The notes beneath the pieces are model-generated. The model saw only the letters and a program-made list of their open reading frames with translations, had not been told where the DNA came from and made no database searches. Both the position numbers and the translations under genes were made by a program. This document shows positions 12,901-27,500 of a DNA stretch of 64,000 nt, in pieces. Source of the stretch: Paragordius varius (lineage: Eukaryota > Animalia > Nematomorpha); contig OZ176056.1 of NCBI GenBank assembly GCA_964247055.1, positions 8,866,001 to 8,930,000 on the forward strand, written 5' to 3'. Within the stretch, counting starts at the first letter, position 1. Each line of letters opens with the position of its first letter.

Positions 12901-15900
12901 CATTCGTGTGATTGGTTCTGAACTCGTGCAAAAATATGTGGGGGAGGTATGCTTGTTACTTAAACTTCATTTTTGATTTTGAATGCATTTTTAAGTTTTA
13001 ATTTACGATTTATTTAGTTAGTTTTTGAGGACTTTGTTTTTTACAAATTTTAAAATGATGTGTATATAAGATTATTTTCATTGGATTTATAAAAATTTAC
13101 AATATGCATTGTAAATTAATCAATATTATCATTATTATTAATTGTTTGGTTTTATTTTACTCAATATTATCGTAATTATTAATATAAATTCTTTTATGTT
13201 CTAATTTTGTCTGAAAAGCCAAAAAAATGCACGTTTTTTTAAATAAATGCAAAAATATAAATTAATAAATTAATCACCATATATTACAATTATTATTAGA
13301 ATTTAGAATCAAAAAAACGATTTAATACCATTATTACAATTATTTTTGGAATTTAAATTCAAAAAAACGATTTAAGCTAACGGTTTAAATGATTCCAATC
13401 TTTTTTTAAAACTTCTCATATATAGTTTCCTGCTAAGATTTTGTTTTGTCTTTATATTTTCAACAATATTATATAATATTCAAGTAATAAATATAACCAA
13501 AAATAGATATTTAATAAATAAATTAACTATTTATGGTTTTTTTAAAAAAATCATTTATACGCGTTTTTACCATTTACTTTAATATAATCATATTATGTTA
13601 TGTTAGGGTGCACGCATGGTCCGAGAATTGTTTGAAATGGCCCGAACGAAGAAAGCTTGTATTATATTCTTTGATGAGATAGATGCCATTGGAGGTATGA
13701 TTTTTAAAAAAAAATTATACGGACAAACACCTTAATACTTGAAAGACAAATAATTTTTTACATAAATTTCTAAAAACCTTGCCTTATAAATGTAAATTTA
13801 CAATGTTATATTCATTTAGGAAGAAAATAGATGATTTACTTAAAAATCTAGAATAAATAGAGTTGTCGTTTTAGAAAAAAACGTGATTTGTCTTTTAATT
13901 TTTATGTCCGTATGATTTTAATTAGTAACTATTATTGGTAAGTAACGACAAATTGAAATTTTAATGTAAAAAAAATATTTTTTCAAAGGACAACCGCTGT
14001 TTCAAACCTTTGTTTATATAATATATAAATTATTTATAATTGTTAAATTTATAATTGATTGTGTTAGCAATTTACATCTCTATTCCATACTTTTCAATTT
14101 TAAACAATGAGTTTTGTTTAAATTAATAAGAATATAAAGTATGGTTGTCTTTTAGAAAAAAATATTTGTCTTTTTTCACGTTTTGTCCTTATAATAATTT
14201 CAATTATTACTCTAAAGAATAACAATTTTTTTTATTTGGTAGATCGCATATCTATTGAGAATCTTTATTTTTTTATAACCAACATTCTATCATTTTAGAA
14301 TGCTTAATAAAGAATAGCGATGTAAAAAATTAACTCACTTTATCTATAAATTTACATAATTAACATGCAAAAAATAAAGATAATGTGGTTTTTTAGTATA
14401 AAATATACCATTTACAGTTCAAATGCTCCTTTGACCAATTTAAATTCACCCTAAAATAAATTATTTGTTTTTCTACGATTAAAAATTAACTTTATCTTAT
14501 AATATTTTTTTAAAAATATGAAATTTTAATGTAATGCTGAAAAATAATTAATTGTTTCGTAAAAATATGTTTCATATTAATGATGAATTATATTATCCCG
14601 TAAACACATAATTTATTTTTAGGGTGAATTTGAATTGTTCAAGGGAGAATTTGAATTGTTCAAGGGCAAATTTGAATTGTTCGAGGTTAAATTAGTCAAG
14701 GGGGGTTTTTTAATGAATTGTTAAAGGGTGAATTTGAATTGTTCAAGGCTGAATATGAATTGTTTAAGGAGGTATTTGAATTGTTCAATGGAGAATTTGA
14801 ATTGCTTAATATAAATTTTTCAAGAAGGAATTTGAATTGTTCAAGGGCGAATTTGAATTGTTCGAGGGTGAATTTGAATTTTTATTTGTCTTTATAATTA
14901 TAATTAGCGTTTTTTATATAATTTTTATATTTCTACCAAAATTTAATATTGTGTTTGTTAGGTGCTCGATTTGATGATGGTTCTGGTGGGGATAATGAAG
15001 TCCAAAGAACAATGTTGGAACTTATTAATCAACTGGATGGATTTGATCCTAGGGGCAATATTAAGGTAACAGTAAAATTTATTTTTTTTTCTTTTTTTCC
15101 TGTCTAACAATAAAAACTTTAAGGTGTAAATAGTTTAGTTGAAAAGTGTATTGGTTTGAAAGATAAAATAAGAGACTGTTTTTCGTGTTAGTTAAGATAA
15201 AACTTTAAGATTAGAATCAAATCTAATTATATTATTATGCTTCAACTCATTATTTTACAAGCCTGGTCACATCGTAGTCTAAATTGGAAACATTTAAAAT
15301 TGTTAGACAGCTTTATAAAAAAATATATGCTTTATATAATTCAACTTTTTATTGCAATATATAAAATAAATATGTTTTTGGATAATTTTATTTTTTTATT
15401 ATTTATATTAAAGGTTTTGATGGCTACCAATAGACCTGATACATTAGATCCAGCCTTAGTTAGACCTGGGCGTCTTGATAGGAAAGTCGAGTTTGGTTTA
15501 CCAGATTTAGCTGTAATATACATGTTTTTTTGATTTTTTTTCCATAATTTTTTCTTTTTTTCGTTTTAATTTAAGCTACCATCATTTTTTTTAATTGAGA
15601 AAAGAGAAACAAGAATATATACCATTAACTGATCGAATTCACCCTTAAACAATTCAAATTCTCTCTTGAACAATTCAAATTCGCCCTCGTGAACAATACT
15701 ACTTTATCCTAAAATAAATTATGTGTTTTTTGAAATTAAAAATTACCTATATTTTTTTATATTTTAAAAAAAAATATAATACTGAAAAAATAATAAACTA
15801 TGCCATAAGATTATATTTCTTATTAATCATAAGTTATTTTAGGCCGAAAACACATGATATATTTTTAGGGTGAATTTGAATAAATGGTATATATAAAGGC

Positions 15901-24570: not shown

Positions 24571-27500
24571 CTATCCATATTTCATTTGAACTTTTTGTCG
24601 AATTAACACGGATTTGATAAACTTTTTCCAAAGCATTAAAGCTTTCTTAGATATTTTCTAAACTCAGAAGAAAAAAATAAAATTAAATATTTTATTAAAT
24701 GTTAAAAAATTTATAAATATTATATTTTACAATTAAAGACAAACCTCTTTTTCAGAATTCTCAGCAGCTATTTGGTATCTGTCATATTCATCCAATAACC
24801 TTTATTTATATACAGTAAGTAAAAATTGAAATTATACGGACAAAGCGTAAAATTATAAAGACAAATAATTATCTTTAAAAGACAACCCCCTGTACTTTTT
24901 TTAACCTTATTTTTTTTATAAACTAATTAATTACACATTTGTAAAATATATGATTGATTGTGTTTCATATCTGGCAATTTAAAACAATAAGTCATGTGTA
25001 ATAAAACAAATCTAAAAAAGTTTTGAAAAACAATGTGGTTTAAATAAAGTTTCGGATAAAAAAAGCAACTAATAATGTTAAAACTCAAACAATTACTTAA
25101 AAACTACATAGACTATGTAAGAAATATTGAAACTTGTATAAAAAATTATTTGGCTTTATTAACAAAGAAACGGTATCTTAATTTTTGGTTGATATCTCTC
25201 TCTAAAAAAGTCTTTGGATTTAAAAAATATAGTTTTTTTTTCAAAAAAAAATCATATAGTTTTAGGAAGCAAAATGTGTTTTTTAACTTTTGCAAAATAA
25301 GTTTGAAAAATTTATGGCAAAAAATCTGGAAAAACTGTTTTTAATCTTTTTCGAGAATGACCCATCCATCTATGATGGGGAAAGCGTGACCCCCACTAAA
25401 TTTTTGATAGGACTAGGTCGCATCGCAGTTCTTAGAAGTAAGTTAAAACTTTAAATATAACGTTGAAACTTATTTTTCAAAACTTAATAGCTAGAAAATC
25501 TGAAAACAACCATCAATCTAAACATATATCAATTTCATTCAATTAAGTGAAAAAAAGCAAAATTCGGCAAAAAAAACGCAAACCGTAAACTACCTTTCTT
25601 GATCTTGTTCGAGAATGACCCATCCATCTATGATGAGAAAAGCGATACCTTCGCTAAATTATTGATAAGACTAGGACTCAGTTCTTTATACTAAGTTTAA
25701 ACTTTAAATATCACGTTTTACACTTATTTTTCAAAATTTTATAGCTAAAAAATTTGAAAAAAAGCTGCAAAGACCGTTGTATTACAGAACTACCCTACCT
25801 ATCAATCTATCAACATTTAAAATTTTCAATTTGTTTGCATTCAATTAAGTGAAAAAAAGCAAAATCCTGAAAAAAAACGCAAACCACCACCTTTCTTGAT
25901 CCTGTTCGAGAATGACACATCCATCTATGATGGGGAAAGCGTGACCCCCACCAAATTTTTGATAAGACTAGGTCTCAGTTCTTTATAGGAAGTTAAAACC
26001 TTAAATATCACGTTTTAACTTATTTTTTAACATTTAATGGCTAAAAAATCTGAAAACAACCATCAATCTATCAACATTTAAAATTTTCAATTTGTTTAAG
26101 CGCAAAAAAATCCTGAAAAAAACGCAAATCACACACCTTTCTTGATCTTGTTCGAGAATGACCCATCCATCTATGATGGGGAAAGCGTGACCCCCGTATA
26201 GTAAGTTTAACACTTATTAAAACTTAATAGCTAAAAAATCTGAAAAAAAGCTGCAAAGACCGTATGTTACAAAGCTACTCAACTACCAATCAATCTATCA
26301 ACATCTAAAACATATATCAATTTCATTCAATTAAACGCAAAAATAAAATCCTGAAAAAAAACGCAAACACTAAACCTTTCTTGATCTTGTTCGAGAATGA
26401 CCCATCCATCTATGATGGGGAAAGCGTGACCCCCGCTAAATTCCCAACCTCTCATGGCGGGAACGCATTGTAATCCGCCACCTCCGCCGTTTGGACCTAA
26501 TCTTTGTGCAACTCGGTTTAAGCCCGGAAGACCGGACAAATAAACACAACCCAGGGGGAGCATTGACATTTTAAAGAGTTCCACGTTTCCGTACGTATTA
26601 ACTGGGATTTTTCCCTGTATCATAACATTCAATGATTAAGGTTTGAAAATGATTGATATAACATAACGGATAACAACAATACAATAAAATATAATTGGTG
26701 AATTTGTAAATAGACCACGTATTAACTGGAATTTTTCCCTGTATAATAACATTGAATGATTAAGGTTTGAAAATGATTGATAAAACATAACGGATAACAA
26801 CAATACAATAAAATATAATTGGTGAATTTGTAAATAGACCACGTATTAACTGGAATTTTTCCCTGTATAAATTATAAGTGTAATAAAAATTATAAAATTT
26901 TTTAAAAAAACTAAGGGTAAGGTTTTTTGAAGATGATTGATATATAACGGAATTTAACAAAACAGTAAAATAATTGGTAAATTTTTAAATAGACACATTA
27001 AAATTGTGTGATAAAACTGTAAACTTTTGATGTCACATTAATTTATGTTGTAATTAGACATAATATGGTTAAAAATACAGTAAAAATTAGTAAAAACACC
27101 TCACAAAAGAGTATAGCAAAATAAAATTAATAAAAGTAATTCACTTGATTAGATATTTTAATTAATTTTGCATTCAAAAACTAAATAATAAAAAATTAAA
27201 TTTTTTATTAAATAAAAATCAAAAAAAAATTTACATCCACTACAGGGGGCGGTATGTATGGTTCTGTTTGCCATATGCCAAATAACTCCTCTTTACTCCG
27301 ATTTTCATTGACCACATTCAATGCATTTGAATCTTTGAGAATTAAAAAATTTTAAGAATTTAAAATATAAACTTTTTTAATAAACCAGATGCTAAATATC
27401 GGCATCTGAGCCTTTTTTTACAAAAAATATTTTATTTTTTCTTATAATAAGTAAATCGATATAAAAAAAATTAAATTTAAAGATACCATTTTGTTAAAAT

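What the first reader, a model, noticed from the sequence alone, without database searches (positions are those of the whole stretch)
14910..26955. Reciprocal duplication of two convergent 3' ends gives PSMC2 and XPC interleaved alternative terminal cassettes
Seen: the layout is PSMC2 exons 1-8 > [PSMC2 9-12 >< XPC 15-13] spacer [PSMC2 9-12 >< XPC 15-13] < XPC exons 12-1. Each gene is complete with its nearer block, and each has a second intact, phase-compatible set of last exons ~7.4-7.5 kb further on, lying across the other gene in antisense. Inference: one event created mutually exclusive 3' modules for both a proteasome ATPase and an NER sensor. Using a distal module means transcribing through the partner's terminal exons, so the choices could be coupled by collision or antisense pairing. 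Serious alternative: two diverged haplotypes concatenated by the assembler.
Basis: partly seen in the sequence, partly recalled or inferred. Interest (0 to 1): 0.85.

Follow-up and report, generated by a model that had tools for sequence, protein, structure and literature searches.

The report
Duplicated 3' ends of PSMC2 and XPC
In a horsehair-worm genome, one 5-kb tandem duplication copied the facing tail ends of a proteasome gene and a DNA-repair gene; both spare tails are still intact and selectively constrained, which suggests they are used as alternative gene ends, but no transcript or read data could be obtained.

Summary
Block A (~14905-19935) and block B (~21150-26950) are colinear copies. 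Each holds PSMC2 exons 9-12 (+) and XPC exons 15-13 (-), with intact GT-AG sites, matching phases, stop codons and conserved poly(A) hexamers. It is one tandem duplication, not a reciprocal one.

- **Junction:** it carries a unique 1.13-kb element bounded by a 22-nt terminal inverted repeat.
- **Constraint:** PSMC2 cassettes differ by 18 synonymous and 1 non-synonymous change (omega 0.015). XPC exon 13 differs by 8 and 0. Exons have no indels in 839 nt, against 24 gap events per kb outside them. "One copy drifting neutrally" is rejected for these (P=2e-7 and 4e-4), but not for XPC exons 14+15.
- **Lineage:** the nearest relative found, Gordionus (Nematomorpha), has single-copy XPC exons and no PSMC2 nearby.
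- **Artefact alternative:** simple haplotype concatenation is disfavoured. There is no gap, the spacer matches neither flank, and non-coding divergence is about 13-22% against 0.55% heterozygosity reported for Gordionus.

Use of the distal cassettes is inferred, and coupling between the two genes is speculation. Other first-stage notes of this scan flag this cassette's selection signature and the echo arrays.

The parts
13607..13694 (+). PSMC2 exon 8 (single copy); its donor at 13694 is shared by 9A and potentially 9B
   Evidence...FFDEIDAIG|gtatga; phase 1 fits both 9A and 9B
14905..19935 (.). Block A of the tandem duplication (PSMC2-proximal, XPC-distal)
14962..17006 (+). PSMC2 exons 9A-12A (14962-15065, 15414-15512, 16032-16128, 16849-17006 including the stop); AATAAA 87 nt after the stop
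17667..19861 (-). XPC exons 15A (17753-17667), 14A (17881-17827) and 13A (19861-19623): the distal cassette for XPC
17470..18460 (.). Tract 92-96% identical to 24345-25365. It includes a dispersed-repeat fragment and is probably a later gene-conversion tract
18436..19622 (-). Array of three ~250-290-bp echo units, each copying the last ~65 nt of XPC exon 13 plus its donor (block A)
19936..21062 (.). Unique spacer bounded by a 22-nt terminal inverted repeat (19936-19957 / 21041-21062, 20/22): candidate TIR element at the duplication junction
21063..21149 (.). 87-nt filler between the TIR element and block B, with no detectable homology to either flank
21150..26950 (.). Block B of the tandem duplication (PSMC2-distal, XPC-proximal)
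21204..24040 (+). PSMC2 exons 9B-12B (21204-21307, 22054-22152, 22796-22892, 23883-24040 including the stop); one amino-acid difference from A (Gln to His); AATAAA 67 nt after the stop
24571..26614 (-). XPC exons 15B (24657-24571), 14B (24799-24745) and 13B (26614-26376): the proximal cassette for XPC
25336..26375 (-). Echo array of four units in block B
26593..26870 (-). 124-bp tandem repeat x2.2 (97%) that makes two extra copies of the exon 13B acceptor plus its first 22 nt (decoy acceptors at 26738 and 26862; 124 is not a multiple of 3)
27235..27333 (-). XPC exon 12 (single copy); its donor at 27235 is shared by 13B and potentially 13A

Best explanation
A single, lineage-specific tandem duplication of about 5 kb had one breakpoint ~55 nt upstream of the PSMC2 exon 9 acceptor and the other ~75 nt upstream of the XPC exon 13 acceptor. 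It copied the convergent 3' ends of both genes. Each gene kept its native terminal exons in the nearer block and gained a second complete terminal module about 7.4-7.5 kb further on: splice sites, frame, stop codon and poly(A) signal. Later events were a TIR element insertion at the junction, one tract of gene conversion, and a 124-bp acceptor triplication in block B. Shown: the structure, and purifying selection on both copies of the PSMC2 cassette and of XPC exon 13 over most of their divergence (dS about 0.17-0.20). Inferred: this constraint exists because part of the transcripts of each gene skip the proximal module, splice exon 8 to 9B (PSMC2) or exon 12 to 13A (XPC), and are translated. 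That would make the cassettes alternative last-exon modules encoding nearly the same protein. Speculative: any coupling between the two genes' choices.
For: Colinear blocks with exact splice sites and phases. PSMC2 cassettes: 18 synonymous and 1 non-synonymous difference, omega 0.015. XPC exon 13: 8 and 0. 'One copy neutral' is rejected at P=2.5e-7 and 3.9e-4. No indels in 839 exon nt against 24 gap events per kb in non-coding sequence, P(0)=4e-5 even if only one copy were neutral. Internal control: the short echo copies of the exon 13 end show 18 synonymous and 17 non-synonymous codon changes. Synonymous divergence equals or exceeds that of well-aligned intron sequence, so gene conversion does not explain exon similarity. 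Poly(A) hexamers and ~200 nt of 3'UTR are conserved in both blocks. Acceptor quality is similar in both blocks. The spacer is unique, bounded by a TIR, and there are no Ns. Gordionus has single-copy exons 13-15.
Against: Co-transcriptional splicing should favour the first acceptor met, so distal use may be rare. The two PSMC2 cassettes encode almost the same peptide, so no functional gain is evident. XPC exons 14+15 are compatible with relaxed constraint in one copy (P=0.16). The selection signature would arise equally if the copies diverged while both were parts of complete genes or alleles.
Confidence: 0.42

Rival explanations
1. Two-step relic. The whole PSMC2-XPC pair was duplicated in tandem, and both full copies evolved under purifying selection as working genes. 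A recent internal deletion, from XPC intron 12 of copy 1 to PSMC2 intron 8 of copy 2, then left exactly this layout. The distal cassettes are fresh orphans, unused and not yet decayed.
For: It reproduces the layout and the synonymous-only divergence without any distal splicing. The introns are full of one repeat family that could mediate such a deletion. The few non-synonymous changes sit in the distal copies or in XPC exon 15, as expected for incipient relaxation. The derived state of the Gln to His change is judged from human PSMC2, which is my own knowledge.
Against: It needs two large events and long co-retention of two full copies of a dosage-sensitive proteasome ATPase gene. The deletion breakpoints would have to fall within ~55-140 nt of two acceptors by chance. 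No remnant of intron 12 or intron 8 homology is seen in the spacer.
Confidence: 0.2
2. The duplication is real, but its two copies come from two already diverged haplotypes or an introgressed allele, joined by unequal crossing-over. The synonymous-only divergence is then allelic history and the duplication is young.
For: It gives the same dN/dS and indel pattern. A preprint reports possible introgression between nematomorph species. Other first-stage notes on this genome mention synonymous 'haplotype-like' exon copies.
Against: Silent divergence of 15-20% with 24 indel events per kb is far above the 0.55% heterozygosity of Gordionus. It also exceeds the ~4% divergence I estimate from organism B's 31% word share (inference). 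The blocks also differ in echo copy number and repeat content.
Confidence: 0.1
3. Assembly artefact: two haplotypes, or a mis-traversed bubble, laid one after the other in the contig. The genome has one copy.
For: Alleles would each be under selection, which gives the observed pattern. No read-level check was possible. Word shares of 0.73-0.79 in four runs do not resolve the junction.
Against: There is no gap or N. The spacer is 1.2 kb of unique sequence with its own terminal inverted repeat, homologous to neither flank, whereas concatenated haplotypes should overlap in their flanks. Divergence is very high for alleles. A follow-up elsewhere in this genome judged local tandem duplications at splice junctions real (not tested here).
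Confidence: 0.1

Closest known systems
Tandem exon duplication giving alternative or mutually exclusive exons (Kondrashov and Koonin 2001; Letunic et al. 2002, from my own knowledge; reviewed in PMC3342872)
   Same: Local tandem duplication of exons with preserved splice sites and frame, both copies under purifying selection.
   Different: Here a multi-exon terminal module (3-4 exons with stop and poly(A) signal) is duplicated rather than one internal exon. One event did this for two convergent genes at once. Splicing to the second copy is not shown.
Alternative last exons (ALE) / alternative 3' terminal exon choice
   Same: A proximal and a distal terminal module, each with its own poly(A) site. 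The choice would depend on competition between proximal splicing or cleavage and read-through.
   Different: Typical ALEs encode different C-termini or UTRs. Here the PSMC2 modules differ by one residue and the XPC modules by four.
Drosophila mod(mdg4) and lola (my own knowledge): arrays of alternative 3' cassettes, some on the opposite strand
   Same: Alternative 3' cassettes interleaved with sequence transcribed from the other strand.
   Different: Those loci serve one gene, use trans-splicing and encode diverse domains. Here there are two unrelated genes and near-identical cassettes, with no evidence of trans-splicing.
Drosophila Gr39a complex locus (PMC2204066)
   Same: Tandemly duplicated exon cassettes joined to shared exons, and evolving by gain, loss and divergence.
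   Different: Gr39a varies its 5' exons and shares its 3' exons. Here the 5' exons are shared and the 3' modules are duplicated.
Heterotype false duplications in genome assemblies (retained haplotypes; my own knowledge)
   Same: Two adjacent diverged copies of the same exons.
   Different: No gap, a unique TIR-bounded spacer, no flank overlap, and divergence far above known nematomorph heterozygosity.

Membership tests
PSMC2 / Rpt1 (26S proteasome regulatory subunit 7) | Best sequence match to Rpt1 rather than to other Rpt paralogs, up to the C-terminus | tested here: met
   exon 12B matches human PSMC2 residues 383-433 at E=1e-25; other Rpt subunits score E>=1e-7
XPC / Rad4 | Rad4 transglutaminase-like domain plus BHD1 and BHD3 | tested here: met
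   Pfam Rad4, BHD_1 and BHD_3 above cut-off; human XPC residues 749-816. BHD_2 was not detected in the single-exon query
Tandem segmental duplication | Two colinear copies in the same orientation, adjacent, with a single junction | tested here: met
   the junction lies between 19935 and 21150
Tandem segmental duplication | Single DNA molecules span the junction, and block depth equals flank depth | not testable with these tools
Alternative last-exon cassettes born by tandem duplication | Intact acceptors and donors, with a phase compatible with the shared upstream exon | tested here: met
Alternative last-exon cassettes born by tandem duplication | Each module has its own stop codon and poly(A) signal | tested here: met
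Alternative last-exon cassettes born by tandem duplication | Purifying selection on both copies | tested here: met
   for the PSMC2 cassette and XPC exon 13; inconclusive for XPC exons 14+15 (P=0.16)
Alternative last-exon cassettes born by tandem duplication | Transcripts join the shared exon to each cassette | not testable with these tools
False duplication from retained haplotypes | A gap or contig boundary between the copies, or flanks that overlap in homology | tested here: not met
   No Ns; the spacer is unique and homologous to neither flank
False duplication from retained haplotypes | Divergence within the species' heterozygosity range | tested here: inconclusive
   Non-coding divergence is about 13-22% with 24 gap events per kb. 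Gordionus has 0.55%, but the window's own species is unknown

The most novel reading that the evidence does not exclude
One tandem duplication gave two essential, convergent genes (a proteasome ATPase and the NER damage sensor) interleaved alternative terminal modules that are both in use. Using a distal module means transcribing antisense through the partner's module, so the 3'-end choices of the two genes would be mechanically coupled by polymerase collision or sense-antisense pairing.
Probability: 0.1. Interest if true: 0.8.

Novelty: new variant of a known kind. Interest (0 to 1): 0.5.

Why it matters
Partial gene duplicates normally decay. Here the orphan-looking 3' halves of two essential genes have stayed free of frameshifts and almost free of amino-acid changes at about 18% silent divergence. 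If they are used, this is a clean natural case of multi-exon alternative last-exon modules being born for two genes in one mutational step. It would come with a built-in test of how proximal and distal terminal modules compete, and of whether convergent transcription links two genes' isoform choice. If they are not used, the locus dates a recent deletion or haplotype event. Either way it bears on this genome's apparent habit of duplicating DNA at splice junctions.

Tried and rejected
- **Read laying.** Local scripts that compare the whole window file with itself did read the file.
- **The search for homologous proteins.** The 9B ORF returned only generic PSMC2 fragments. The 13A/junction ORF returned nothing. 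The species is not in the collection, so independent contigs could not be fetched.
- **Metagenome scans.** Two scans for exon cores found nothing.
- **Rfam.** No hits in the window.
- **Conserved part of XPC intron 13.** I considered a functional non-coding element and rejected it. It contains a dispersed-repeat fragment and has no match in Gordionus, so gene conversion is more likely.
- **Spacer as a long foldback.** Only the 22-nt termini are convincing; the internal palindrome is at AT-rich background level.
- **Sequence after the TIR element.** The 87 nt could not be matched to either flank.
- **Gene conversion as the cause of exon similarity.** Rejected, because synonymous sites are as diverged as introns, and conversion at equilibrium predicts omega near 1 for an unused copy (my reasoning).
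- **Echo-unit orthology.** Only partly resolved.
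Full report
**What is there.** The window is AT-rich (GC about 24%) and carries intron-containing animal genes. Self-comparison shows two colinear blocks, A ~14905-19935 and B ~21150-26950. Local identity is 85-88% in non-coding parts and offsets drift from 6.2 to 7.0 kb because of many indels. No other long duplicated block exists in the 64 kb; the remaining hits are dispersed repeats.

**Genes and exons.**
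- The plus strand encodes PSMC2/Rpt1. Exon 12B matches human PSMC2 residues 383-433 at E=1e-25, far better than other Rpt subunits.
- The minus strand encodes XPC/Rad4: Pfam Rad4, BHD_1 and BHD_3, and human XPC residues 749-816.
- Peptide mapping with flanks gave exact boundaries, listed under parts.
- All acceptors and donors are AG/GT in both blocks.
- PSMC2 exon 8 ends in phase 1 at 13694 and fits both 9A (14962) and 9B (21204).
- XPC exon 12 ends in phase 0 at 27235 and fits both 13B (26614) and 13A (19861).
- Both blocks keep the stop codons, the AATAAA/ATTAAA hexamers and about 200 nt of 3'UTR homology for both genes.
- Pyrimidine content of the acceptors is similar in the two blocks.

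**Architecture of the event.**
- It is one tandem duplication of one segment, not a reciprocal event.
- Homology starts about 55 nt upstream of the exon 9 acceptor.
- Homology ends about 75 nt upstream, in XPC sense, of the exon 13 acceptor.
- The only junction lies between 19935 and 21150.
- This interval is unique in the window.
- It is bounded by a 22-nt terminal inverted repeat at 19936-19957 and 21041-21062 (20/22). These are the only two matches in the window, against 0.2 expected by chance. I read it as a ~1.13-kb TIR element inserted at the junction.
- The remaining 87 nt could not be placed.
- In block B a 124-bp unit (102 nt of intron 12 plus 22 nt of exon 13) is repeated 2.2 times at 97% identity. 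This creates decoy acceptors at 26738 and 26862.
- Both blocks contain arrays of ~250-290-bp units that copy the end of exon 13 with its donor: three in A and four in B.
- A tract at 17470-18460 is 92-96% identical to its partner although it includes a dispersed-repeat fragment. I read this as later gene conversion.

**Selection.**
- PSMC2 cassettes: 18 synonymous and 1 non-synonymous difference (Gln to His in B), dS 0.195, omega 0.015.
- XPC cassettes: 12-13 synonymous and 5-6 non-synonymous, omega 0.12. All 8 changes in exon 13 are synonymous, and the amino-acid changes cluster in exons 14-15.
- I tested the hypothesis that one copy is neutral and the other constrained. It is rejected for PSMC2 (P=2.5e-7) and for XPC exon 13 (P=3.9e-4), but not for XPC exons 14+15 (P=0.16).
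- Exons have no indels in 839 nt, while non-coding parts have 24 gap events per kb. P(0) is 4e-5 even if only one copy were free to drift.
- As an internal control, the short echo copies of the exon 13 end show 18 synonymous and 17 non-synonymous codon changes.
- Synonymous divergence is as high as in well-aligned introns, so conversion does not explain exon similarity.

**Origin of the window and relatives.**
- The closest XPC in 1.8 billion representatives is P0121 from Gordionus sp. m RMFG-2023 (Nematomorpha). It is 82% identical over BHD3 and 55-70% over other exons.
- The window therefore comes from another horsehair worm, one that is absent from the protein collections.
- In the Gordionus locus, XPC exons 13-15 are single-copy, intron 13 is about 290 bp with no echo array, and there is no PSMC2 within 10 kb downstream.
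- The duplication is therefore specific to the window's lineage.

**Real or artefact.**
- Four DNA runs from two samples of one organism hold 73-79% of the sampled words of 12301-22300. A second organism holds 31%. No RNA run holds the stretch.
Spanning reads, depth and RNA junctions could therefore not be examined.
- Against simple haplotype concatenation: there are no Ns, the spacer is unique with a TIR and matches neither flank, and divergence and indel load are far above the 0.55% heterozygosity reported for Gordionus montsenyensis.
- Other notes of this scan describe recurrent tandem duplications at splice junctions in this genome, one of which a follow-up judged real. I did not test those notes. 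They make a biological origin more plausible.

**Interpretation.** I consider four scenarios.
- **Main explanation (0.42).** An old partial tandem duplication whose distal cassettes stayed constrained because a share of transcripts use them as alternative last-exon modules.
- **Two-step relic (0.2).** A whole-locus duplication followed by a recent internal deletion. The constraint would date from when both copies were complete genes.
- **Diverged haplotypes (0.1).** A real duplication formed by unequal exchange between diverged haplotypes.
- **Assembly artefact (0.1).**

Coupling of the two genes' choices through convergent transcription is an idea without data.

**Side observation on XPC.** The position aligned with the third hydrophobic anchor of the centrin-binding motif is Val in the proximal cassette, Thr in the distal cassette and Leu in Gordionus. 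The motif assignment comes from my own knowledge. This could reflect relaxation or divergence of the distal copy.

Noticed in passing
window 26593-26870: A young 124-bp tandem repeat (97%) triplicates the XPC exon 13B acceptor with its first 22 nt. Use of either upstream copy would add 124 or 248 nt and shift the frame, which could weaken the proximal XPC cassette relative to the distal one (13A has a single acceptor).
   Followed up: partly
window 18436-19622 and 25336-26375: Arrays of 3 (A) and 4 (B) units of ~250-290 bp, each copying the last ~65 nt of XPC exon 13 plus its donor. Some units are 98% identical to the real exon end, which suggests ongoing homogenisation. Gordionus has none.
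   Followed up: partly
window 14905, 19935 and 26716 (breakpoints): Three independent duplication breakpoints lie 55, ~75 and 102 nt upstream of splice acceptors, about where branch points sit. Other notes of this scan report junction-anchored duplications genome-wide. A mechanism tied to splice junctions is conceivable but untested.
   Followed up: no
window 14621-14880, 15636-15697, 21411-21498, 23157-23239, 23399-23456, 28056-28228, ~32537-32672: A 21-bp tandem repeat (consensus AGGGTGAATTTGAATTGTTCA), part of a dispersed MITE-like family, sits in many introns in both orientations and gives false ORFs such as [13 protein letters not shown].
   Followed up: no
window 17667-17753 and 24571-24657: XPC ends right after the centrin-binding-like motif (..KKYG stop) in both cassettes, whereas Gordionus XPC continues for ~37 more residues. 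A weak relic of that tail may follow the stop in block A.
   Followed up: partly
window 19623-19861 and 26376-26614: BHD3 carries an extra glycine-rich stretch (GPNGGGGG, 7 residues longer) relative to Gordionus and human XPC.
   Followed up: no
window 11555-11700: The ORF holding a PSMC2 exon includes an Asn/Thr-rich low-complexity stretch before [10 protein letters not shown]. Whether it is exonic was not determined.
   Followed up: no
I sent them to no search tool afterwards and left them out of the intron comparison.
   Followed up: no
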